Assembly: GCA_002269645.1 (NCBI GenBank)
Contig: NIVC01001401.1
Span: 62,001 to 126,000 of the forward strand
Reading direction: 5' to 3'
Length of the DNA stretch: 64,000 nt
Source: Macrostomum lignano
Taxonomy: Eukaryota
The notes below the pieces were generated by a model. The model did no database searches. It was not told the origin of the DNA and saw only the letters and a list, made by a program, of their open reading frames with translations. Made by a program: the position numbers and the translations under genes. Below are positions 3,961-53,221 of this stretch, piece after piece (position 1 is the stretch's first letter; the number at the start of each line of letters is the position of its first letter).

Positions 3961-4511
3961 AGAACCGAGAGCAGTGCTGTCTAGAGTATAAATAAAGGGG
4001 TGTTTTGCATCTTTTTCAATTTACTAACATTTAACAAGAGGGAATGTAAATCCACGATTAGCATCGGTACATAAAAGAATGGTATTCTTCCCCAGGTGAA
4101 TAAATTAATTATAACCCTGTCTAACCTCACATACTGACCAGCCTGACCAGCTGAACAATTGAGAAATGCGATCACCCATTTTTATACTAACTGGTTTCAG
4201 TAAGAGCTATGGTCTCAGCATTTTTGCCATTAATATTTATACATCCTTGCCTACTCGTGCTTTTCTACTCATAGTAGAGTGTTGTGTAGGAATTTAAAGT
4301 GTTTCGAGTATTTAGCACTCACTGAGTCGGCTGTCATAAAAGCTAAAAATAATTCCTGCACTGAGCATGGCTTCAACTTTCTGTTTGCCTTTTTCTCTGC
4401 TCATTTATTATCATCGGCGTTTACAAATTTGAACCTAGGATGTCAAGCTAGTGTACTATGCAGGTTTAGATATTGTCTATAGTAGACCATTATTTGACGC
4501 ACTGTATCCTA

Positions 4512-5920
4512 GAGGATGTTGGAGTTCCAATCTGAGGATGTTGGATTCCAATCTGAGGATGTTGGAGTTCCAATCTGAGGATGTTGGATTCCAATCTGAG
4601 GATGTTGGATTCCAATCTGAGGATGTTGGATTCCAATCTAAAGATGTTGGATTCCAATCTGAGGATGTTGGATTCCAATCTGAGGATGTTGGATTCCAAT
4701 CTGAGGATGTTGGATTCCAATCTGAGGATGTTGGATTCCAATCTAAAGATGTTGGATTCCAATCTGAGGATGTTGGATTCCAATCTGAGGATGTTGGATT
4801 CCAATCTGAGGATGTTGGATTCCAATCTGAGGATGTTGGATTCCAATCTGAAGATGTTGGATTCCAATCTGAGGATGTTGGATTCCAATCTGAGGATGTT
4901 GGATTCCAATCTGAGGATGTTGGATTCCAATCTGAAGATGTTGGATTCCAATCTGAGGATGTTGGATTCCAATCTGAGGATGTTGGATTCCAATCTGAAG
5001 ATGTTGGATTCCAATCTGAAGATGTTGGATTCCAATCTGAGGATGTTGGATTCCAATCTGAAGATGTTGGATTCCAATCTGAGGATGTTGGATTCCAATC
5101 TGAAGATGTTGGATTGGAGTTCCCATCTGAAGATGTTGGAGTTCAATCTAAGGATGTTGGATTCCAATCTGAAGATGTTGGATTGGAGTTCCCATCTGAA
5201 GATGTTGGAGTTCCAATCTAAGGATGTTGGATTCCAAACTGAAGATGTTGGATTGGAGTTCCCATCTGAGGATGTTGGAGTTCCCATCTGAAGATGTTGG
5301 ATTGGAGTTCCCATCTGAGGATGTTGGAGTTCCCATCTGAAGATGTTGGATTCCAATCTGAGGATGTTGGATTCCAATCTGAGGATGTTGGATTCCAATC
5401 TGAGAATATTTGAGTTCCAATCTGAGGATTTTGGATTCCAATCTGAAGATGTTGGATTGGAGTTCCCATCTGAAGATGTTGGAGTTCCAATCTGAAGATG
5501 TTGGATTGGAGTTCCCATCTGAAGATGTTGGAGTTCCAATCTAAGGATGTTGGATTCCAATCTGAGGATGTTGGAGTTCCAATCTGAGGATGTTGCAGTT
5601 CCAATCTAAGGATGTTGGATTCCAATCTGAGGATGTTGGATTCCAATCTGAAGATGTTGGATTGGAGTTCCCATCTGAAGATGTTGGAGTTCCAATCTGA
5701 AGATGTTGGATTGGAGTTCCCATCTGAAGATGTTGGAGTTCCAATCTAAGGATGTTGGATTCCAATCTGAGGATGTTGGAGTTCCAATCTGAGGATGTTG
5801 CAGTTCCAATCTAAGGATGTTGGAGTTCCAATCTGAGGATGTTGGATTCCAATCTAAGGATGTTGGAGTTCCAATCTCAGGATGTTGGAGTTCCAATCTC
5901 AGGATGTTGGAGTTCCAATT
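4512..5920. repeat. 21-bp minisatellite with 27-bp variants
   Basis: GGATTCCAATCTGAGGATGTT; source of the spurious FQSEDVG/ESNILRL ORFs. Confidence 0.97.
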
Positions 5921-40321: not shown

Positions 40322-41312
40322 GGTTCTCTCTCCCTCTGTCCAGCTCAGTCTTGTTATTCTTTATCTCTCTCCCTCTCTGTCCAGTTCAGTCTTATTATTC
40401 TTTATCTCTCTCCCTCTCTGTCCAGTTCAGTCTTATTATTCTTTATCTCTCTCCCTCTGTCCAGCTCAGTCTTGTTATTCTTTATCTCTCTCCCTCTGTC
40501 CAGTTCAGTCTTGTTATTCTTTATCTCTCTCCCTCTCTGTCCAGCTCAGTCTTATTATTCTTTATCTCTCTCCCTCTCTGTCCAGTTCAGTCTTATTATT
40601 CTTTATCTCTCTCCCTCTGTCCAGCTCAGTCTTGTTATTCTTATCTCTCTCCCTCTGTCCAGTTCAGTCTTGTTATTCTTATCTCTCTCCCTCTGTCCAG
40701 CTCAGTCTTGTTATTCTTTATCTCTCTCCCTCTGTCCAGTTCAGTCTTATTATTCTTTATCTCTCTCCCTCTGTCCAGTTCAGTCTTGTTATTCTTTATC
40801 TCTCTCACTCTGTCCAGTTCAGTCTTGTTATTCTTATCTCTCTCCCTCTGTCCAGTTCAGTCTTATTATTCTTATCTCTCTCCCTCTGTCCAGTTCAGTC
40901 TTGTTATTCTTTATCTCTCTCCCTCTGTCCAGCTCAGTCTTGTTATTCTTTATCTCTCTCCCTCTGTCCAGTTCAGTCTTATTATTCTTTATCTCTCTCC
41001 CTCTGTCCAGTTCAGTCTTGTTATTCTTTATCTCTCTCCCTCTGACCAGTTCAGTCTTGTTATTCTTTATCTCTCTCCCTCTGTCCAGTTCAGTCTTGTT
41101 ATTCTTTATCTCTCTCCCTCTGTCCAGTTCAGTCTTGTTATTCTTTATCTCTCTCACTCTGTCCAGTTCAGTCTTGTTATTCTTATCTCTCTCCCTCTCT
41201 GTCCAGTTCAGTCTTATTATTCTTTATCTCTCTCCCTCTGTCCAGTTCAGTCTTGTTATTCTTTATCTCTCTCACTCTGTCCAGTTCAGTCTTGTTATTC
41301 TTATCTCTCTCC
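40322..41312. repeat. ~39-bp pyrimidine-rich minisatellite
   Basis: CTCTCTCCCTCTGTCCAGTTCAGTCTTGTTATTCTTTAT. Confidence 0.95.
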
Positions 41313-41728: not shown

Positions 41729-44700
41729 TCAGCCATCGTCCAGGAGTCCGATCTTTCTGCCGAACGATTTCACCTTGTCCTTGGCCTCCTCCTGCATCAG
41801 CTGGAAGCACATGGCGATCATGGCCAGGCCGAACAGCAGGTACAGGCCGCAGGTGATTGGCTTGGCCTCGTCAGTCCAGGACGACTCTTGCATGCCGGGC
41901 ACGAAGTCGCCCAGCCCGATGGTTGTCAGGGTGATGAACACGAAATAGACGGAGTCCATGAAGCCCCACTGCTCCCAGGAGTAGAACAGCACCGCCCCGG
42001 TCAGGATGTAGATGCAGAACACCGTCAGGGTCAGCCAGACCGGCACGCGGATTACTTCGCCGAGATCCTCGACGCTGCTGACTGGCGTCGAGGCGGCGTA
42101 GGAGCTGGCGGCCCGCCCGGCGGTTCCCACCGACGCCGGCGGTAGCACGCACAGGTCCAGCGTCTGCCCGGTGCTCGGGTCGGCCAGCTGGAAGATTCGT
42201 CGACGCGACATCATCGCTGGCGGCGATCCACCGTTGCCGCCCAGCGTCGCCTCCGCCGCCCCGTGTCGCCCGCCGGCCGTCGTAGCCGTCGACAGACCGC
42301 TCCGTCCGCTGCCGCCGCCGCCGCCGCGCCGGACTGTAGCGCCGCTACGGTTGCTCCGTCGGGACCGGTAGCGGCTGGAGATGGGCATGATCTCCGACAG
42401 CTGGTCAAAGGCGCGCACCCGGCCCCGCCGACTGCGACTGCTGATGGCCTCGTGATGGCGGGCCAGCCGGCGCATCCGACGTCTGCGCCACAGACGGAGG
42501 CAGCAGTGCTGGTAGCAGAGGCGAAACACGTCAGCCAGGAAGGAGCCGAGGTTGTGCAGGCATAGCAGCATCAGCGGGATGCCCACCATGGCGTAGAAGA
42601 TGGTGCACAGCCGGCCGGCAACCGTTTTGGGCGCCACGTGGCCGTAGCCTGCGATGGCAGCCAGTTTGGGACCAATTTTATACAATTAATTAAAATTTGC
42701 ACTACTTGTAGTAGCAATAGCCCTTTGTGTTTGAATGCGTCCGTAAGTAGTCCGTAAATAGTAAGAAATCTGCCATTCTGTTCCTTCAGTGTCCTTGAAT
42801 CTGCCTCTCCGCTCCCTCAGTGTCCTTGAATCTACCTCTCCGCTCCCTCAGTGTCCTTGAATCTGCCTCTCCGCTCCCTCAGTGTCCTTGAATCTGCCTC
42901 TCCGCTCCCTCAGTGTCCTTGAATCTGCCTCTCCGCTCCCTCAGTGTCCTTGAATCTACCTCTCCGCTCCCTCAGTGTCCTTGAATCTGCCTCTCCCTTC
43001 CCTCAGTGTCCTTGAATCTGCCTCTCCCTTCCCTCAGTGTCCTTGAATCTGCCTCTCCGCTCCCTCAGTGTCCTTGAATCGGCCTCTCCGCTCCCTCAGT
43101 GTCCTTGAATCTGCCTCTCCGCTCCCTCAGTGTCCTTGAATCTACCTCTCCGCTCCCTCAGTGTCCTTGAATCTGCCTCTCCCTTCCCTCAGTGTCCTTG
43201 AATCTACCTCTCCGCTCCCTCAGTGTCATTGAACTGAGTGCCCTTGAATCCTCCAATAACCAACTCGACCTGTTTCCTTTTCTTAGAAACAGTTTGAAAT
43301 TCGTGGCCCCTTCTCTCTCTGACCATTCAACCGTGAGCGAACCATGAGAGGCCAAAACTAGCGCAGAACACGGGTACTGCATGCTGGTTTTGCATCGGGA
43401 CGAGATTTGAAGGACAACGGCAAACTGCAGAACGCACAGCTCTGGTTTGTCCATGCCCCCCCCCCCCAATCCCGCTGGGATGCGGCCCCGCGCAACTTGG
43501 GTTTTACCGATAGTTGCACAGCTAGCCAGAATGTTGGCTTTCCTCTTAATTAAGATCGAATCCGTCTTGACTGTCGGACCTGTTTTCTTGGAATTGGCCA
43601 ATTTAGCTTGAAAATCTACGACTGAGGCCAGGACTAAACGATAACAGCAGTCCAAAATCCAATAGTAGAAAAACGGAGGGGGGCATTGTAGTGAATTTCT
43701 TAGAAATAAAATTCTCAGCAAGGACTACTCAAGTACAAGGACGGGAAATCTCGTTTCTTGGAAAAAAATTTTCCAAGAAAATCTTTTTTCAGCAGGAGGC
43801 AGACCCAATGTTCATCTTTTGATATGTTGTGCCTTTGTTATAGCTCTATTGATATTCATAAAGCTTAATGTTTTATTCTACGTACATTTGTACATGTCCT
43901 GTGCCTGAAATTCATTAAAATTGCATGGCTCGGCTCATTGGTTTTATGAATCTATTTTGTCATTCTTAGCTGACTGTGTAACAGTATTTGTAACAGAGAT
44001 GATAAAATGGATTCATGAAACCAAGGATTCGAGCTGTGCCATGCATTTTTACGCTCGTATGATTTATAGGCTCAATAGCCCTCGACAATTTAATCTCGCA
44101 ATTGGGAAGACTTTCAAACCAGAGGAGATATGGAAGAGACAGACACAGAGAAAGAGAAAAATGATGATCATAAAAGAACGGTGATCCGCCTCCCGAAGAG
44201 GTCATCAGTGTGAAGGCATGGCTGACCAATCTGGCTGGCACTGCAGGCAACTGAGCGAGGTAACTGCACTGATCGATACCATTTGCTTGGCTAAGTCTGT
44301 GCACAATCATCTGCAGTTTCGCTTCAGAAATCTTTAATTGAAAGCATACAGATTACACTGGGACCAATTTTTTTGGGGCTTACTCAGCTGGTTAACCGAT
44401 GCGAATTCAAAAATGGGATTTCCCCAATTGCTTGCAGGCAATTATTGCAGATTGTAATTGAAGTCCACTCTGCCGTGTGCAGGGTCATGATATAGGGTAT
44501 GGGCTCGTATTCTACACGCATTTCAGCTCGTGATGACACTTCCTAGGCAATAATATAGATGCATAGATTTATAGATGCATGGATATATAGATTGATATAG
44601 ATGTATAGATGCGCAACGCATCTGAAGGCTGCGTACGCCTGTTCACTCCAAGGACTGGGGAGGGGGGGGTCGCCACACACACCCTCAATTACCCCAGCTA

Positions 44701-47700
44701 ATGTCTTGCTCAAGGACACAAATTGTTCCGAGGTGGCTCGAGAATCGAACCCCCGACCTTTCAGTCGTGAGTCCGACGCTCACCCCTAGATAGATGCATA
44801 TACCTAGAAGTATAGATGCATGGATTGCATGGATACATAAACTCACAGACGCATAGATATGCCAGAAAGATCAGTTGAGACATCAGTGCCCTGGCAACCC
44901 ATAAAAATTTAATGATCGCTCTGATTAACACAGAAAACCGATTAGCCAAGTTAGACGTCCTGCGAATTGGATGCACAACTTCGGAGGGGGACAGCCAGAA
45001 CTCCCAGGATGAACGACATCGTCTCACAGCAAAAGTACACTATGCGCTCTTATTATAAACTTCCCACCGCCAATTCGCAAAGCAGGACTAGAAGAGAGAG
45101 GGGGAAATAAGAAGAGGAGAGACTAGATCACGGAGCCAGGAGAGTGGAGAGACTAGATCACGGAGCCAGGAGAGTGGAAAGACTAGATCACAGAGTCAGG
45201 AGAGTGGAAAGACTAAATCACGGAGCCAGAAGAGTGGAGAGACTAGATCACCGAGTCAGAATAGTTGAGAGATTAGATCACGGAGTAAGAAGAGTGGAGA
45301 GACTAGATCGCAGAGCGAGATGAGTAGAGAGACTAGATCACAGAGCGAGATGAGTAGAGAGACTAGAACACAGAGTCAGAAGAGTGGAGAGACTAGATCG
45401 CAGAGCGAGATGAGTAGAGAGACTAGATCACAGAGTCAGGAGTGTGGAGAGACTAGATCACAGAGTCAGGAGTGTGGAGAGACTAGAATCACGGAGTCAG
45501 AAGAGTGGAGAGATGAGATCACAGAGTCAGAAGCATGTATGGATACAAGTGGAAAATCAGTACATCAGCAATAGTCACAAGCGCCGCTCACCAATGGTAG
45601 TCACTATGGTGATGGCGTACAGCAGAGCGCCAGGAAAAGTCCAGATAGTCTGATTGACCCCCGGCTTGTCCTCGTCTGGCCGACTCCAGCCCCGCATGGC
45701 GTAGCTGTAAACAGACTCCTCCAGTTTCAGCGCCCAGGTACGCAAAGTGGCCGAATAATTGTACCTGGCCATCATAGTATTGGTGCCAACAGTGGAATAA
45801 TCTTTACCGCCTTTGATTTTCTCTAGCAGAACTCGATTGTTCTCCAACTCGAGGTGGGCAACGCTGGTGAAATTGTAGAGGCTGGCTTGCATCAATTCTA
45901 AAGAGGCCTGCACCTGCAGCACCTGGCGCCGGTAGGCGGTTGAATGATTGAACAGCTGGAACACCTCCTCTCGGATGCGAGCCTTGGCCGAGTTGACAGC
46001 CTGCCGAAGCTCCTTGCGGATGCCGAGCTGAGATCTGGATTTTTTATAGAAACTTTGATTGCTGAAGATGAAGCATTTTCGGATTTTCAGTTGTCTGTTA
46101 CTTATATATATATAGTAATTTTCTATTAATAATAAATGGACTATTGATCTAATAATCCGTTTTTTTACTCATCGATTCATTCAGTCTCGTTTTTTCATGA
46201 TCGATATTTTAATATTGATTTGTTAATATAGATTTTTTCTATCGATTTTTTAATCGATTTTATTGCTTATACGATGCTTATTCTCTTCTGTCTACGATTT
46301 AGGCTAGGGTTAGGGCTAAAGTTATGGTTAAGGTTAGGGTGTAGGTAAGAGTTTAGGTTAGGATTTAGGTTATAGGGTTTAGTTTAGGGTTTAGGTTAGG
46401 GTGTAGGTTAGCGTTTAGGTTATAGGGTTTAGGGTTAGGGTTTATTCTTGGGCAGTCAGTTTTCGCGGACCGGCTTACTTATCCAGCTGCTGTCGGATCC
46501 TGTGCACCATGTTAGTGTAGTCCTGCATGCTGCGACCGGTGCTGCCAGACCGGTTGCCACCCGGATGCCCAAACGGGCACGGCGGACAGCTGATGTTGGA
46601 CAGGAGGCTGCCGAGGACCCCCACCTGCGTCTCGATGCTGTCCTCATGCTGGGTGAAGTCCCCCTGAAGCTGGTGCAACAGCTGCGAATTTGCGTCGCCA
46701 ACTTCGCGCACGGCGTCGGCCAGTCGGAGCCGACTCGAACTCAGCATCTGGCTGATGTTGAGCAGCTTCTTGTAGGACTCATCTGCCATGTCTTCTAGAA
46801 CGTGAAACAACTGCTCAAAGTCCGACTTGAGCTCCTGGATCATCTCGACGACTGGTTGGGTCATGTTGCCGCTGTGGGGTTGGGCAGTTGTAGCTAGATG
46901 AGTAATCTACAGACTAGATAAGTAATATACAAGCTATATATGAGTAATCTACAAGCTATATATGAGTAATATACAAGCTATATATGAGTAATCTACAAGC
47001 TATATATGAGTAATCTACAAGCTATATATGAGTAATCTACAAGCTATAGATGAGTAATCAACAAGCTAGATGAGTAACATCCATAAATTTGGCCCAGAAA
47101 AACATTAACATGATTTCCTACCGCAATTAAAAGCAAGAATTTCTCTAATTGGTCGAGTTCAGTTAGTGCACTGCAATTACAGTGGATTAGCAATGAGGTC
47201 TTGAGCGCGCATTACCAAGACCTCCCACTGCTGATCCTACGAGCTCAAGTGCAATACTAAGCGCCGCATCAGTGAATTATTCATGTTCACTGAGACTCTC
47301 CTCTCTTCCTTTGTTTGCCGAAAATCTGCTTGAGTGCGAATCGAATTTTAGTTTGTTTTTCCGGCACCTCTACTCCATCCCCGTTCTCTGCCGCAACAGC
47401 TGCTGGGGTTACTCAGTTAATTATTAATCTGAGGTTCACCCCGCATGGCTGGCTAGGAGGAAAGAATACATTCCTGAGAAGCAGGGATCTTGCAACTGAT
47501 GGTATGAAAGGCCTGAATAGAGTGCGTGTTCAACTTTCGAAGTTCTTGATTTTTGTAAGCTTCTATCGATAGACAGGGTTGATTGTGTAGAGTCTGAGTT
47601 CTAGTCTCTTAGATCTAGTCTTTTAGATCTAGTCTCTCAGATCTAGTCTCTCAGATCTAGTCTCTCAGATCTAGTCTCTCAAATCTAGCCTCTCAGATCT

Positions 47701-50700
47701 AGTCTCTCAGATGTAGTCTCTCAGATCTAGTCTTTCATATCAAGTCTCGTAGATTTAGTCTTTATTATCAAGTCTCACAGATTTAGTCTCCCTTATTTAG
47801 TCTAAGATCTATTCTCTCAGATTTAGACTCTCAGCTCTTAGTCTTTAGATCTAGTCTTTCTGATCTAGTCTCGTTTCCCAGATCTAGTCTCGCATAGTCT
47901 TCCTATTCTAGTCTATAGATCCAGTCTCTCTTGTCTCAATTTTTAGATCTATTCTTAAATAATCTAGTGGCTCAGATTATCAATATTTTCTTAGGGCAAG
48001 CTCTCAGCAGCTTCCTTCCCAGTCCCAGTCTCAAACCTCATATGAATTCTCGTCTGAGCCACGCTCTCCGTGTACATCCGATTGTCCATGACCGACCGAT
48101 CGTGCTCCAGGTAGACGAACAGGTAAGCCCCTGACAGGGTGTAGCCAATCACCAGCAGGCACAGGCCGATGTGCGAGAACAGGAAGGCCACGGAGGTCTT
48201 CAGGCAGGAGACGCAGCGACGCCTTCGTCGCTTCCACTTCGACACCTTCGGCCGAGTGGGCGGCTTGCCGTCGTTCTGCTGCTGCTGCTGCTGATTTTTC
48301 TGCTTCTCGGGCGAGTCTGTCGCCTGGTCGGCGGCGGCCTTCTTGCCATCGGTGTCTGCCGCCTCTGCGAGCGGCGGCAGGGTTTAAGCTGGACTGAAGG
48401 GTCACATCTTTTTCTTTCCTTTTTCCGAATCCATTCACGAATCAATTCACGAATCCATTCACGAATCCATTCACGAATCCATTCACGAATCCATTCACGA
48501 ATCAATTCACGAATCCCTTCACGCATCCATTCACGAATCCATTCACGAATCCATTCACGAATCCATTCACGAATCCATTCACGAATCCATTCACGAATCC
48601 ATTCACGAATACATTCACGAATCCATTCACAAATCCATTCACGAATCCATTCACGAATCCATTCACGAATCCATTCACGCATCCATTTACGAATCCATTC
48701 ACGAATCCATTCACGAATCCATTCACGAATCCATTCACGAATCCATTTACGAATCCATTCACGAATCCATTTACGAATCCATTTACGAATCCATTCACGA
48801 ATCCATTTATGAATCCATTCACGAATCCATTCACGAATCCATTCACGAATCCATTCACGAATCCATTCACGAATCCATTTATGAATCCATTCACGAATCC
48901 ATTTATGAATCCATTCACGAATCCATTCACGAATCCATTCACGAATCCATTCACGAATCCATTTACGAATCTCTTCTTGAATCTCGATTTATCTTCACAT
49001 CCTTCATCCCTCCCTTCAACTCCCTGTCAATCTGACTCTCACTGTCATCTTCAGTCTCCGCCGCAGCCGCAGACGTCACCCCGCCGCCGGCGGCCAGTGG
49101 CGCCAGCAGCAGCTTCGTCTGCGCATCCTGACGCCTCGTTCGCACCGGCCTTTCCGGCGGCGAACCCGCAGCAGCAGCAGCTGCGGCAGCGGCTGACGCA
49201 GGCAAATTGTCGTAGTTGGACGTTCGCTGGCCGGCCGTCGCTCGCAGCTCCTCGATGTCGTCTTCGCTCTGCATCGCGTCGCTGTAGGTTGTGAAGGCGC
49301 TGAATGGGCGAGGCCGGTAATGCAGATTTCTCAGGACCAGAGCCTGGCACTCGCGTTCGGTGAGCAGGCCGCCTGTCAGGTTGTCGTCCTCGATGCCCTT
49401 CAACGCGGCCCCGACTGGCTCTGCACGGTCGGTGTGCAGAGACAAAGGAAAAGTGCATCCGTGTAGAGGATAACGGAGATGGCTAATATATGAAGCGAAG
49501 CAGGACTGCATGATCGCTGGTTTATTGGCGGGCAACCCGTGTGGTCTACTTGAGGGACGGCCCCAGCCAAGGACACCCAGAACCAGAATTTGGAGTAGAA
49601 ACTTTTCTCCCAGATCTTCTGTCGAATCCCGGTCTCGTTCCCGATCCCGATCCCGATCCCGATCCCGATCCCGATCCCGATCCCGATCCCGATCCCGATC
49701 CCGATCCCGATCCCGATCCCGATCCCTTGGGATAAAGGGATACCAGTTTCATTTAGTGTCAAAGAACTGGCCTGGAAAGAAGAGTTGCCACTCCAAATTC
49801 TAGTTTTTCGGTCTCCTTGGCCCAGCTAAGGGGATAATATCTTAGCGCGACCCCGGGATGGACTGTCGGATGGGATGCCGCAAAAGTTAACAACTTTTGG
49901 CGAATCTGCTTTACTGAAGCACTGAAGCAGACAAGACAGGCAAAGCAGTTAAAATTGTTAGTAGGGGGCAAAACTTCCGCATTTCTGCTCTCCGCGTCCA
50001 GAAACAGTGCTGTGAGCCCAAGCAGGGTGGCAGCAGCGGTGCAGATTGGTTTGACCAGTTTGCGCTTGGACAGACCCCAGCATGTGGTCGGAGCCTGGAC
50101 CATCTAAGCTAGGCTTGGGTCTGAAGATATATCCATGATTTAACATTACCTATCATCAAAGGCTATTCATGGAGATCTACAACTAGTAGAATATCTGGAG
50201 TGGAAACTGACATCCCTAAAGCAGATTCTAGATCCGTTTGGAATAGCGTAGTTGAAAATCAGCTTATTCCATTGGCGTCATGCACAAACGCAGTTAGTTT
50301 AGTTTCGTTTATAGTTTATCATATTTGTTTATTAATTCCTCTTTATCACCTTTGGCGGCCAAAAAAACGTTTAAATTTTTTAATTGCTACGAACCGACGA
50401 CATTTGCTGATGAAAACTTGAGGGTCTCCATTGAGCGATCAGCTGTGCCAATCAAACCTAAGTGTCACGGTGACTCTAGTGTTCACTTTTGTACCCGCAG
50501 ATAGTTCTGTTCTGCGCATATACTTCTGAGAGCCAATTAAAACTAAAATAAAAGTTGGGGAACACTTTCAAAGTTGCTTTTGAACTACTTAAAGTAGCTT
50601 AAGAATTCAGCTACCTCTATGTATAAATATATAGTCTATGGTCGGCTCCGTGAGAGCTGGGGAAGAGAATGGGGACAGGGAGAGAGACTGGGGATGAGCT

Positions 50701-51557
50701 GGCACGGTCGCTGGAATCCATAGTCTATGGTCGGCTCCGTGAGAGCTGGGGAAGAGAATGGGGACAGGGAGAGAGACTGGGGATGAGCTGGCACGGTCGC
50801 TGGAATCCATAGTCTATGGTCGGCTCCGTGAGAGCTGGGGAAGAGAATGGGGACAGGGAGAGAGACTGCGGATGAGCTGGCACAATCGCTGGAATCCAGT
50901 CTATGGTCGGCTCCGTGAGGGCTGGGGGAGAATGGGGACAGGGAGAGAGACTGGGGATGAGCTGGCACAGTCGCTGGAATCCAGTCTATGGAGTAACAAT
51001 GGTGAGCCTCCCATAGCTACGCAAAAGTGAGTTCTGTCACCTTCAGCTGCACTCGGATTCGCCAGAGAATTCACGCCGCTTCTACACCCATCGGAGACGC
51101 CGTTTTGCGTCGGACCGCCGCCGCCTGACGCAGCGGCAACCAGCAGGGCGGCGGCGTCTGAGCCCGTAGCCGCTGCCGCCGCTGCCGCAGCCCCCTCGTC
51201 TTCTTCATCGTCGTGCGCGATCGGCGCTTTCGTTTCTAGCGAGTGCAGCCCGACTGTGGCCGCGGCGGTGGTCGCCACCGCTGCAGCTAGGAAGCTGTGC
51301 TGCTGCTGATGATGTTGCTGCTGATGTCTCTGATCTTTGCGTCGGTGCTTGGACTCGCCCCGTCTACTCCGACGACCGGAAGCAGCGGCGTCTCGATGCG
51401 GCTTAGCCGCCGGGGTCGCCGACGTTTCTGCGAGGGTCACCGACGTCATTGCCATTGCTGTGGCGGCCTCGGCACCACGGGCGCGCCGCTTTGCTTCCGC
51501 GTCCGCCTTTCGACTGTTGTCGGCGTCGTTTTTCGCGGCGCTGTCGCTTGTTACCAT
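41729..51557 (-). CDS. Two-pore-domain (K2P, TWK/KCNK-like) potassium channel, 992 aa, with long N-terminus and greatly extended extracellular cap
   Basis: Exons 51557-51041, 49420-49043, 48364-48037, 46871-46479, 46034-45592, 42648-41729 total 2979 nt with consistent phases. M1 [27 protein letters not shown]; P1 [20 protein letters not shown] (intron inside the G codon); M2 [18 protein letters not shown]; M3 [21 protein letters not shown]; P2 [24 protein letters not shown]; M4 [19 protein letters not shown]. Confidence 0.92.
42775..43235. repeat. 31-bp minisatellite (K2P intron 5)
   Basis: TGAATCTGCCTCTCCGCTCCCTCAGTGTCCT. Confidence 0.95.
44610..44789 (-). mobile_element. 5'-truncated tRNA-derived SINE in K2P intron 5
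   Basis: Minus strand TAGGGGTGAGCGTCGGACTCACGACTGAAAGGTCGGGGGTTCGATTCTCG followed by TGTGTCCTTGAGCAAGACA, a segment typical of animal tRNA-derived SINEs; embedded in ATAGAT-like simple repeat. Confidence 0.65.
45110..45532. repeat. 30-bp minisatellite (K2P intron 5)
   Basis: GACTAGATCACGGAGCCAGGAGAGTGGAGA. Confidence 0.9.
46305..46442 (+). repeat. Degenerate telomere-like TTAGGG/TTTAGG tract (K2P intron 4)
   Basis: TTAGGGTT, GGTTAGGG, TTTAGGG units. Confidence 0.75.
46895..47075. repeat. 22-bp minisatellite (K2P intron 3)
   Basis: ATATGAGTAATCTACAAGCTAT. Confidence 0.9.
47595..47935. repeat. Degenerate 14-bp repeat (K2P intron 3)
   Basis: AGATCTAGTCTCTC. Confidence 0.85.
48426..48970. repeat. 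12-bp minisatellite (K2P intron 2)
   Basis: GAATCCATTCAC. Confidence 0.97.
49639..49725. repeat. (CCCGAT)n hexamer repeat
   Basis: ~14 copies. Confidence 0.95.
50630..50990. repeat. 89-bp tandem repeat x4 (K2P intron 1)
   Basis: TAGTCTATGGTCGGCTCCGTGAG… recurs at 50632, 50721 and 50810. Confidence 0.92.
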
Positions 51558-52024
51558 GGTAACTGGCGGGCTGCGCGCAGGGTAAGGATGTAAGTCGGTG
51601 GAGGAAACTATCAATACACGTTTCTTCATTACAAACACACTACTTTCAGTAAAGGTTGAAGAAAATGAAAGCGCGGAGAATTAATAATCTAGAAGAGAAG
51701 GCATCAAGGTGAGCGAGCAGCTGATGAAGAAGTCCTGTTTACATTCATTTTCGAACATTGCAGATTTGGTACCAGCTATGAATAATTGGTAATCTCGTTA
51801 ACTTGTAAATTCCATGCACTTTCATTTTCTATCGAACACGAATATCCAAGTCCGATGGAAAGAGTGTTCTTAGTCCTACCCCAGTTAACACAGAAGGCAC
51901 TTTATATTGTCGCGAAGACTGCCTTTGCAGTTCTTCACTGTCGCGTTCTTGTAAAAGCATTCTCCATAGGGTTGGGATCAGGATCAAGAACAGGGGTTGG
52001 GTTCGAGATTGGGATCAGGATCAG

Positions 52025-52770
52025 GACCTGAACTAGGGATTCAAGATCGGGATCTAAGCTCGGGATTCAAGATCGGAATCTAAGCTCAGGATTCAAGATC
52101 GGGATCTAAGCTCGGGATTCAAGATCGGGATCTAAGCTAGGGATTCAAGATCGGGATCTAAGCTAGGGATTCAAGATCGGGATCTAAGCTCGGGATTCAA
52201 GATCGGGATCTAAGCTAGGGATTCAAGATCGGGATCTAAGCTAGGGATTCAAGATCGGGATCTAAGCTCGGGATTCAAGATCGGGATCTAAGCTCGGAAT
52301 TCAAGATCGGGATCTAAGCTCGGGATTCAAGTTCGGGATCTAAGCTCGAGATTCAAGTTCGGGATCTTGGCTCGGGATTCAAGATCGGGATCTAAGCTCG
52401 GGATTCAAGATCGGGATCTAAGCTCGGGATTCAAGATCGGGATCTAAGCTCGGGATTCAAGATCGGGATCTAAGCTCGGAATTCAAGATCGGGATCTAAG
52501 CTCGGGATTCAAGTTCGGGATCTAAGCTCGAGATTCAAGTTCGGGATCTTGGCTCGGGATTCAAGATCGGGATCTAAGCTAGGGATTCAAGATCGGGATC
52601 TAAGCTCGGGATTCAAGATCGGGATCTAAGCTAGGGATTCAAGATCGGGATCTAAGCTAGGGATTCAAGATCGGGATCTAAGCTCGGGATTCAAGATCGG
52701 GATCTAAGCTCGGGATTCAAGATCGGGATCTAAGCTCGGGATTCAAGATCGGGATCTAAGCTAGGGATTC
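52025..52770. repeat. 26-bp minisatellite
   Basis: GGGATTCAAGATCGGGATCTAAGCT(C/A). Confidence 0.97.
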
Positions 52771-53221
52771 TAAAGAAGACGGGCAAAGTTTCAATGCCTG
52801 AGTCAGTGCAGCAAACAGCCGGTGCAAGTCGGCAGTCAGACTCGATCAAAATCAGCGGCCGCTTACCCCCAGTTACAATGGAAGGCGTAGGGCCTGTCAG
52901 AATGCGCGTGTTTTCCCAAAAATCGATCCAGGAAATCTCTGGGCAAGCCTGACAAATAGCCGGCTTGCAGCGGGAATAATGCCTTATATACACTGCCTCC
53001 TTGATGGGGATTTTTCTCCCCCCCCCATCAGCCCCCCGATCCTCGCCGGCTCGCCAAATTTGCCCCATTCGCCCCGTGCGATTCGTTCCAAGAGAATAAA
53101 AGCCTATCCGAGTGGCTTATCATCTGGGATGTTGCTCTCGTCAGCCCTTGGCTAAAATGAATATCATCTGCTTTCCACTTGATGACTGCTGTGCTGTTCA
53201 TTCCGGTCTTGTAGAAACTCT

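What the first reader, a model, noticed from the sequence alone, without database searches (positions are those of the whole stretch)
45640..48110. K2P channel with a ~285-residue extracellular cap, including a dedicated helical exon and a CPPC motif
Seen: between M1 (…YLFVYLE) and the P1 pore helix (WTFPGALLY) the spliced product has ~24+131+130 = ~285 residues. Exon 46871-46479 (phase 2-2, 131 codons) is amphipathic-helix/coiled-coil-like ([49 protein letters not shown]…) and contains SCPPCPFG. The loop has 8 N-glycosylation sequons (NMT, NIS, NIS, NRS, NHS, NFT, NYS, NQT), as expected if extracellular. Known: the K2P cap (TREK/TRAAK/TWIK/TASK) is ~55-60 aa, two helices per subunit, often with an apical inter-subunit disulfide; CPPC is the IgG1 hinge inter-chain disulfide motif. 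Inference: a much taller helical cap, possibly a ligand, adhesion or tether module on a leak K+ channel. The symmetric exon could be skipped to tune cap length.
Basis: partly seen in the sequence, partly recalled or inferred. Interest (0 to 1): 0.72.

Follow-up and report, generated by a model that had tools for sequence, protein, structure and literature searches.

The report
Flatworm K2P channel with giant cap
A potassium leak channel gene of the flatworm Macrostomum lignano encodes an outer "cap" loop of 284 residues, four times the usual 71, that is transcribed, conserved between gene copies and probably a sugar-coated helical stalk; its function is unknown, and other flatworms and tardigrades have smaller versions.

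Summary
The window is Macrostomum lignano DNA. My seven-exon splice model (minus strand, 52940-41729) reproduces GenBank protein PAA68367.1 (Mlig031602.g2) residue for residue, and that annotation is built from transcripts.

The product is a K2P channel: two pore domains, TIGYG and TIGLG filters, and a fold matching TASK, TREK and TRAAK. Its M1-P1 loop is 284 aa, against a median of 71 in 232 homologues, and is the longest seen.

- The loop has 8 N-glycosylation sequons (2.2 expected, P≈0.0004).
- Its only two cysteines form CPPC.
- AlphaFold2 predicts long helices, with CPPC in the main non-helical break. Confidence is low to moderate.
- All six nucleotide differences in the loop exons among three gene copies are synonymous. 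The cytoplasmic N-terminus shows 16 nonsynonymous against 15 synonymous changes.
- The loop sequence is an orphan: HMMER against 1.84 billion proteins found only itself.

It is not unique in kind. Trematode, cestode and tardigrade homologues have 138-238 aa loops, none described in the papers I could search.

The inter-subunit disulfide and a taller cap are plausible but unproven. Nothing supports a ligand or tether role or exon skipping.

Verdict: a real new variant of a known kind, of moderate interest.

The parts
41729..52940 (-). Gene Mlig031602.g2 (K2P channel subunit). The CDS is annotated as 5'-partial. Seven coding exons: 52940-52867, 51570-51041, 49420-49043, 48364-48037, 46871-46479, 46034-45592, 42648-41729 (stop included).
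   Evidence: The spliced translation equals P0153 / PAA68367.1 exactly. The window is 100% identical over 12,501 bp to NIVC01001401.1. Pfam Ion_trans_2 matches twice.
48105..48194 (-). M1 transmembrane helix ([30 protein letters not shown]), preceded by the basic KWKRRRRR stretch.
   Evidence: Conserved in homologues. Helix with pLDDT 90-96 in the AF2 model.
48037..48104 (-). Start of the M1-P1 loop: 22 codons ([22 protein letters not shown]) plus 2 nt of a split Ser codon. The model continues the M1 helix through this stretch, which corresponds to cap helix 1.
46479..46871 (-). Exon 5, 393 nt, phase 2-2, lying entirely within the loop. It encodes a predicted amphipathic helix of about 65 aa, then the Gly/Pro-rich break holding CPPC, then the start of the next helix.
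   Evidence: Sequence and splice sites. AF2 helices. Amphipathicity P=0.002. 0 nonsynonymous and 2 synonymous differences among paralogues.
46577..46588 (-). CPPC motif (TGT CCG CCG TGC), loop residues 118-121. These are the only cysteines in the loop.
   Evidence: It lies in the low-confidence coil between the two longest helices in both AF2 runs.
45644..46034 (-). Loop-coding part of exon 6 (130 codons): three predicted helices, then the conserved cap-base motif [17 protein letters not shown].
   Evidence: The GW motif is shared with homologues. 0 nonsynonymous and 4 distinct synonymous differences.
45592..45643 (-). P1 pore helix and the first part of selectivity filter 1 ([18 protein letters not shown]). 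The intron splits the first Gly codon of GYG.
   Evidence: pLDDT 94-97.
41729..42648 (-). Last exon: the rest of filter 1 (YG), M2, an Arg/Ser/Gly-rich cytoplasmic M2-M3 loop of about 160 aa, M3, P2 (TTIGLGD), M4, a short C-terminus and the stop codon.

Best explanation
This is an expressed two-pore-domain (K2P) potassium leak channel subunit of Macrostomum lignano, from the invertebrate TWK-7/TWK-9/TWK-18/galene/TRESK-like group. Its extracellular M1-P1 cap loop carries a lineage-specific insertion of roughly 210 residues between the conserved cap start and the conserved cap base (the GW motif).

Shown:
- The exons are in transcript-derived gene models.
- The loop is the longest of 232 homologues.
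- It is sequon-rich.
- It is as constrained between gene copies as the channel core.
- Its sequence is an orphan.

Predicted with low to moderate confidence: the loop is almost entirely long amphipathic helices, with one central Gly/Pro-rich break that holds CPPC.

Inferred:
- Each subunit contributes a long helical hairpin.
- Two hairpins pack around the dimer axis, as ordinary cap helices do, to give a heavily N-glycosylated four-helix stalk several times taller than a normal cap.
- CPPC at or near the distal turn may cross-link the subunits, like the apical cysteine of TWIK, TREK and TRAAK caps.
- The conserved cap base suggests the side exits for K+ and the leak function are kept.
- The stalk most plausibly acts in dimer assembly, stability or partner specificity. 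An extracellular binding role is possible but unsupported.
For: - K2P identity: Pfam Ion_trans_2 matches twice, E=5.7e-34. The filters are TIGYG and TIGLGD. Foldseek top hits are TASK-1, TREK-2 and TRAAK, probability 1.00. PDB sequence hits are KCNK3 and KCNK9, E about 1e-28.
- Gene model: the seven-exon translation equals PAA68367.1. The GenBank Mlig_3_7 annotation derives from RNA-seq and a de novo transcriptome, not ab initio prediction (PMC5730564).
- Constraint: among three copies (g1, g2, g3) the loop exons have 6 distinct differences, all synonymous. Exon 7 has 4 distinct differences, all synonymous. N-terminal exons 2-3 show 16 nonsynonymous against 15 synonymous codon differences. Fisher P=0.014 for loop against N-terminus, and the binomial probability of 6 of 6 synonymous is about 4e-4. 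Introns are only 77-92% identical.
- Extracellular position: 8 sequons against 2.2 expected, P about 0.0004.
- Helicity: AF2 with an alignment gives helices 77-141, 185-231, 237-277 and 285-315, pLDDT 55-80. AF2 on the loop alone gives helices 34-122 and 141-235 around a coil (123-140) that holds CPPC. The nearest fold matches are not significant and are chemoreceptor and SMC antiparallel hairpins.
- The longest helix is amphipathic, P=0.002.
- Cap biology: two helices per subunit with a largely conserved apical disulfide (PMC8436263; PMC4726246).
Against: - No dimer model, coordinates or experiment, so hairpin geometry, stalk height and the disulfide are all inference.
- pLDDT in the loop is only 40-80, and 55 on average for the loop alone.
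- CPPC is absent from the M. lignano paralogue P0162 and from every other homologue. A CxxC can also close within one chain.
- The loop interior cannot be aligned even with the within-species paralogue, so over long times the exact sequence is not constrained.
- The selection test rests on few substitutions between very recent duplicates.
- Apical disulfides are dispensable for function in several mammalian K2Ps (PMC4726246).
Confidence: 0.65

Rival explanations
1. Tolerated spacer. The M1-P1 loop of this K2P clade is a permissive site that expands repeatedly. The M. lignano insert would then be a fast-evolving, glycosylated, helix-prone filler with no specific role beyond not disturbing the cap base.
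For: - Loops of 138-238 aa have arisen in trematodes, a cestode and tardigrades, with unrelated sequences.
- HMMER finds no homologue of the insert among 1.84 billion representatives.
- The interior cannot be aligned with paralogue P0162.
- There is no internal repeat or known domain.
- AF2 confidence is modest.
Against: - All substitutions in the loop exons between copies are synonymous, whereas the N-terminus accumulates replacements.
- Sequons are enriched almost four-fold.
- The long helix is amphipathic.
- The only two cysteines are arranged as CPPC exactly at the central break.
Confidence: 0.22
2. Cassette exon. Exon 5 (46871-46479) is alternatively skipped to give a 153-aa loop, tuning cap length.
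For: The exon is symmetric (phase 2-2), so skipping keeps the frame: AG+A gives Arg, then SQLGIRKE.... Paralogue P0162 has a 147-aa loop.
Against: - All three annotated copies include the exon.
- The 90% identity cluster has only these three members of 1021-1030 aa and no shorter isoform, although the GenBank set keeps alternative CDS isoforms.
- P0162 itself contains the start of an exon-5-like segment.
- Skipping would remove CPPC and the longest helix, leaving an unbalanced hairpin.
Confidence: 0.08
3. Annotation or assembly artefact. The long loop would come from wrongly joined or retained sequence, and the real mRNA would have a normal cap.
For: The CDS is annotated as partial. The locus is full of tandem repeats and lies in a duplicated part of a redundant assembly.
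Against: - The reading frame is open across three exons with canonical GT-AG sites.
- Three independent loci give identical exon structure.
- Exons are 99-100% identical while introns are 77-92% identical, and exon differences are synonymous only.
- The gene models derive from transcripts.
- No other reading frame or shorter path joins M1 to P1.
Confidence: 0.04
4. CPPC works within one chain, as a CxxC redox or metal site or a local disulfide that stiffens the turn, and not as an inter-subunit staple.
For: CxxC motifs commonly close on themselves. No structural evidence places the two motifs on the dimer axis. Most homologues need no cap cysteine: 159 of 213 short loops have none.
Against: The motif sits in the central break of a symmetric dimer's cap, where canonical K2Ps have their inter-subunit disulfide. 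Rigid Pro-Pro between the cysteines gives parallel inter-chain bonds in the IgG1 hinge (established knowledge, not tested here).
Confidence: 0.2

Closest known systems
Canonical K2P extracellular cap (TWIK-1, TRAAK, TREK-1/2 and TASK-1/3 structures)
   Same: It occupies the same place, between M1 and P1. The first helix continues M1. The cap base is conserved just before the P1 helix. Cysteine sits in the middle of the loop. The channel core superposes on TASK, TREK and TRAAK.
   Different: The loop is 284 aa, against about 55-70 aa in solved channels and a median of 71 in homologues. Five predicted helices replace two. There are 8 sequons. CPPC replaces a single apical Cys. No dimer structure is available.
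Invertebrate TWK-7/TWK-9/TWK-18/galene and vertebrate TRESK (KCNK18)-like K2Ps
   Same: These are the best full-length and core hits. They share the M1 motif AFLFSHIGL and the GW(D/N)G-type cap base. They also share a long cytoplasmic M2-M3 loop and a short C-terminus.
   Different: Their loops are 69-86 aa and mostly lack cysteine. I did not resolve orthology by phylogeny, and the database names are automatic.
Long-loop homologues in trematodes (Schistosoma, Trichobilharzia, Clonorchis, Opisthorchis, Dicrocoelium), Taenia and tardigrades (Hypsibius, Paramacrobiotus)
   Same: They belong to the same clade, expand the same loop (138-238 aa), and are rich in sequons with 4-10 each.
   Different: The insert sequences are unrelated. 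Trematodes add a Cys-rich segment after the GW motif, with 5-8 Cys. By eye, tardigrades duplicate the canonical LWN(I/L)T...NWT cap unit. None has CPPC, all are shorter, and none is described in the papers I could search.
IgG1 hinge CPPC
   Same: The tetrapeptide is identical, in an extracellular, glycosylated, two-fold symmetric protein.
   Different: This is a motif resemblance only. There is no homology, and pairing was not tested.
Antiparallel helical hairpins that dimerise into four-helix bundles (bacterial chemoreceptor signalling domains, SMC arms)
   Same: These are the top fold matches of the loop-only AF2 model. They show the topology that the model adopts.
   Different: The matches are not significant (E>=0.26, TM 0.2-0.3) and the model has low confidence. 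This is an analogy of shape, not a relationship.

Membership tests
K2P (KCNK/TWK) two-pore-domain potassium channels | Two pore domains in one subunit, with M1-P1-M2-M3-P2-M4 topology | tested here: met
   Pfam Ion_trans_2 matches twice. The AF2 helices and Foldseek hits match K2P structures.
K2P (KCNK/TWK) two-pore-domain potassium channels | K+ selectivity filter signatures in both pore loops | tested here: met
   TTIGYG in P1 and TTIGLGD in P2 are read directly from the translation.
K2P (KCNK/TWK) two-pore-domain potassium channels | Extracellular helical cap formed by the M1-P1 linker | tested here: inconclusive
   The linker is present, predicted helical and sequon-rich, with a conserved base. 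Its size and helix number depart from the two-helix cap, and no dimer model could be made.
K2P (KCNK/TWK) two-pore-domain potassium channels | Apical inter-subunit disulfide (present in most but not all K2Ps) | not testable with these tools
   CPPC lies in the central break. Pairing needs a dimer structure or non-reducing gels.
K2P (KCNK/TWK) two-pore-domain potassium channels | Intron interrupting the first Gly codon of the P1 G(Y/F/L)G (conserved in KCNK genes; recalled from memory) | tested here: met
   Exon 6 ends ...ATT G|gt and exon 7 starts ag|GC TAC GGC.
K2P (KCNK/TWK) two-pore-domain potassium channels | Potassium-selective background current | not testable with these tools
   This needs electrophysiology.
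TRESK/TWK-7-like subgroup | Closest sequence relatives belong to this group | tested here: met
   Top hits carry the names TWK-9-like, TWK-7, TWK-18-like, KCNK18-like and galene. The names are automatic and no tree was built.
TRESK/TWK-7-like subgroup | Long cytoplasmic M2-M3 loop and short C-terminal tail (recalled from memory for TRESK) | tested here: met
   About 160 aa of low-complexity sequence lie between M2 and M3, and about 25 aa follow M4.
Classical coiled coil | Continuous heptad pattern with hydrophobic a/d positions | tested here: inconclusive
   The a/d occupancy test gave P=0.06 and 0.04 for two helices and was not significant for the others. Amphipathicity was significant only for helix 77-141. 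No dedicated predictor was available.

The most novel reading that the evidence does not exclude
The cap of this K2P has been rebuilt into a rigid, glycan-covered four-helix stalk more than 100 Å tall, stapled at its tip by two CPPC disulfides. The stalk would reach beyond the cell coat to bind a matrix or cell-surface partner or to act as a tether, so that position or mechanical load on it controls a leak K+ channel. The parallel loop expansions in parasitic flatworms and tardigrades would be versions of the same invention.
Probability: 0.1. Interest if true: 0.8.

Novelty: new variant of a known kind. Interest (0 to 1): 0.45.

Why it matters
The cap is the hallmark of K2P channels, yet its role is still described as poorly understood (PMC4726246). 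Natural channels whose caps are two to four times longer, conserved between gene copies and heavily glycosylated, offer ready-made variants for asking what the cap does in assembly, partner choice, pharmacology and gating. They also show that this loop is an evolutionary hot-spot in at least two phyla.

The same clade carries long, species-specific extracellular loops in schistosomes and liver flukes. These are exposed, parasite-specific surfaces on an ion channel, which could interest anthelmintic or antibody target research.

None of this changes what is known about K2P channels unless a function is shown.

Tried and rejected
- Homology of the loop. phmmer against 1.84 billion representatives returned only the M. 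lignano cluster and one spurious tandem-repeat protein, P0034. The PDB sequence search found nothing below E=0.2. Pfam gave only a sub-threshold HSR hit.
- Internal duplication of the cap unit as the origin of the insert. No significant self-similarity between loop segments.
- Similarity of the insert to other long loops (P0162, Clonorchis, Opisthorchis). Not significant. The script stopped before the remaining loops were tested.
- Placing the insertion point with the 143-sequence MAFFT alignment. The canonical 71 aa were scattered across the long loop, so only the two ends are reliably homologous.
- Fold search with the loop-only model. No significant match.
- Literature on long K2P caps, on flatworm or tardigrade K2Ps, and on the gene name. 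Nothing relevant.
- Homodimer prediction and coordinate-level measurements. The tools offer only monomer prediction and return no coordinates.
- Neighbouring long ORFs in the window. No informative Pfam hits apart from repeat or coiled-coil noise.


Full report
**What is there.** The region lies in a minus-strand gene of a eukaryote whose introns are packed with tandem repeats. A full-length protein search identified the organism as the flatworm Macrostomum lignano. The gene is the hypothetical protein Mlig031602. The window is 100% identical over 12,501 bp to contig NIVC01001401.1 of assembly GCA_002269645.1.

I derived exact exon borders. The seven exons are 52940-52867, 51570-51041, 49420-49043, 48364-48037, 46871-46479, 46034-45592 and 42648-41729, all with GT-AG borders. 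Their translation equals GenBank PAA68367.1 (P0153, gene copy g2) residue for residue. The annotated CDS is 5'-partial.

**Checking the observation.**
- The loop between M1 (...YLFVYLE) and the P1 helix (WTFPGALLY) is 284 aa. It is made of 22 aa from exon 4, a split Ser, 130 aa from exon 5, a split Lys, and 130 aa from exon 6.
- Exon 5 is 393 nt with phase-2 introns on both sides.
- SCPPCPFG is present, and its two cysteines are the only ones in the loop.
- The eight sequons are all there.
- Shuffling the loop gives 2.2 +/- 1.3 sequons, so P(>=8) is about 0.0004. The other 416 residues carry one.

The GenBank annotation of Mlig_3_7 was not predicted ab initio. It comes from a genome-guided transcriptome (StringTie/TACO on RNA-seq plus a mapped de novo transcriptome, with ORFs called by TransDecoder) (PMC5730564).

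Three gene copies exist: g1 and g2 on one contig, and g3 on another. All have the same exon structure. Between copies the exons are 99-100% identical, while the flanking introns are 77-92% identical with many indels.

In the two loop exons there are six distinct nucleotide differences, all synonymous. The last exon has four, all synonymous. N-terminal exons 2-3 show 16 nonsynonymous against 15 synonymous codon differences, plus indels. The contrast gives Fisher P=0.014 for the loop alone and 0.0013 for loop plus core. Six of six synonymous has a probability of about 4e-4 under neutrality.

So the loop is translated and, over the short time since duplication, is as constrained as the channel core. 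No exon-5-skipped isoform is in the protein cluster.

**What the protein is.**
- Pfam finds Ion_trans_2 twice.
- The filters are TTIGYG and TTIGLGD.
- An AlphaFold2 model built with 143 homologues has pLDDT above 90 in M1, P1-M2 and M3-P2-M4. Foldseek matches it to TASK-1, TREK-2 and TRAAK.
- The best solved relatives by sequence are KCNK3 and KCNK9.
- The closest database relatives are invertebrate channels automatically named TWK-9-like, TWK-7, TWK-18-like, KCNK18-like and galene.
- Like that group, the protein has a long low-complexity M2-M3 loop and a short C-terminus.
- The intron that splits the first Gly codon of GYG in P1 is at the position I recall as conserved in KCNK genes.

**How unusual is the loop?** I located M1 and P1 with small HMMs in 232 homologues gathered in three searches. 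The median loop is 71 aa (5th-95th percentile 69-177), and 213 loops fall between 55 and 100 aa. The M. lignano copies, at 284 aa, are the longest.

They are not alone. Fourteen proteins exceed 150 aa:
- Clonorchis and Opisthorchis: 184 aa
- Schistosoma mekongi: 197 aa
- Dicrocoelium: 209 aa
- Trichobilharzia: 234 aa
- S. mattheei and S. margrebowiei: 238 aa
- Taenia: about 157 aa
- three tardigrade proteins: 174-180 aa
- the three M. lignano copies themselves: 284 aa

Below 150 aa, a fourth tardigrade protein has 138 aa, and a second M. lignano paralogue (P0162) has 147 aa. P0162 shares the flanks and the first dozen residues of exon 5 (NVTKPVEQLIQ against [11 protein letters not shown]), but not the interior.

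The long loops are sequon-rich but unrelated in sequence. Trematodes add a Cys-rich piece after the GW motif. By eye, tardigrades duplicate the canonical cap unit. The sample is not unbiased, because the search queries favoured this clade. I found no paper describing any of these loops.

**The insert itself.** It is an orphan.
- phmmer against 1.84 billion representative proteins returned only its own cluster and one spurious repeat protein.
- The PDB and Pfam gave nothing.
- There is no significant internal repeat.

Only the ends align with ordinary caps: the first residues after M1, and the RGWSRPD...W cap base. About 210 residues are therefore inserted somewhere between the two canonical cap helices.

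Two AlphaFold2 runs agree on the secondary structure.
- With the alignment: M1 continues as a helix to residue 70 of the query. Helices 77-141, 185-231, 237-277 and 285-315 follow, with pLDDT 55-80. CPPC (167-170) lies in a coil with pLDDT about 40.
- With the loop alone (mean pLDDT 55): two helices of 89 and 95 residues flank an 18-residue coil that starts at CPPC.

The nearest fold matches are not significant. They are chemoreceptor and SMC antiparallel hairpins, which describes the model's shape and nothing more. The longest helix is significantly amphipathic (P=0.002), but heptad regularity is weak overall.

**Most likely mechanism.** Ordinary K2P caps are built from one helical hairpin per subunit, packed around the two-fold axis, usually with an apical disulfide. 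They leave two side exits for K+ (PMC8436263; PMC4726246).

The simplest reading is that this hairpin has been lengthened several-fold into a glycosylated four-helix stalk. The conserved base would keep the ion exits. CPPC, near the distal turn, would be placed to link the two subunits.

The steps that are shown are expression in transcript models, constraint, length, sequon excess and the position of the cysteines. The steps that are predicted are helicity and the central break. The steps that are inferred are hairpin pairing, stalk height, the disulfide and any function. I favour a role in dimer assembly, stability or partner choice, because that is what the cap interface is known to contribute. 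A ligand, adhesion or tether role is possible but has no support here.

**Rivals.**
- A tolerated, fast-evolving spacer explains the lack of conservation beyond the species and the repeated expansions. It fits poorly with the synonymous-only differences, the sequon excess and the placement of CPPC.
- The cassette-exon idea is compatible with exon symmetry only.
- An annotation artefact is very unlikely.
- CPPC might close within one chain rather than between chains.

**Verdict.** The feature is real and the observation accurate. It is an extreme member of a recurrent but undescribed loop expansion in one K2P clade, so a new variant of a known kind. Interest is moderate.

Noticed in passing
window 40325-41312, 42767-43233, 45116-45533, 46898-47068, 47600-47872, 48426-48971, 49626-49726, 50631-50991: Every intron and the 3' flank of the gene carry long tandem arrays with units of 39, 31, 30, 22, 14, 12, 6 and 89 bp. 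One example is about 45 copies of CGAATCCATTCA just upstream of exon 4. The arrays differ in copy number between the three gene copies.
   Followed up: partly
window 46305-46444 (intron between exons 5 and 6): A degenerate telomere-like array (unit GGTTAGGGTTTA, TTAGGG-related) sits inside the intron.
   Followed up: no
L001 (NIVC01001401.1:149939-168510), L003 (the window's own locus, same contig 100729-117940, opposite strand), L002 (NIVC01002145.1): The assembly holds three nearly identical copies of the gene. Two lie on the same contig in opposite orientation, about 35 kb apart (gene to gene). This fits the known redundancy and recent duplication of the DV1 genome.
   Followed up: partly
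window 48270-48290 (exon 4) and exons 2-3 (51570-51041, 49420-49043): The cytoplasmic N-terminus differs between copies by poly-Q and poly-H length and by about 17 residue replacements. Everything from M1 to the stop codon is identical in protein sequence.
   Followed up: yes
window 42450-41950 (within the last exon): The M2-M3 cytoplasmic loop is about 160 aa of Arg/Ser/Gly-rich low-complexity sequence with pLDDT below 50. This is a TRESK-like architecture. I saw no obvious calcineurin-docking (PxIxIT-like) motif by eye.
   Followed up: no
P0006, P0168, P0244, P0201 (tardigrade homologues): Their 138-180 aa loops appear to contain two copies of the canonical cap motif (…LWN(I/L)T…NVL…NWT…). 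This suggests expansion by tandem duplication of the cap hairpin, a different route from the flatworm insert.
   Followed up: no
P0033, P0154, P0156, P0169, P0045 (trematode homologues): Schistosome and fluke homologues carry an extra Cys-rich, sequon-rich segment between the GW motif and the P1 helix, with 5-8 cysteines. M. lignano lacks it.
   Followed up: no
window 52940 and upstream: The annotated CDS has no start codon (5'-partial). Copy g1 extends seven residues further, so the true N-terminus and first exon remain undefined.
   Followed up: no
window 4490-5560 (-): A 356-aa open frame gives many weak hits to coiled-coil Pfam families (DUF4472, Fib_alpha and others). It is probably part of a repetitive coiled-coil gene or a compositional artefact.
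   Followed up: no
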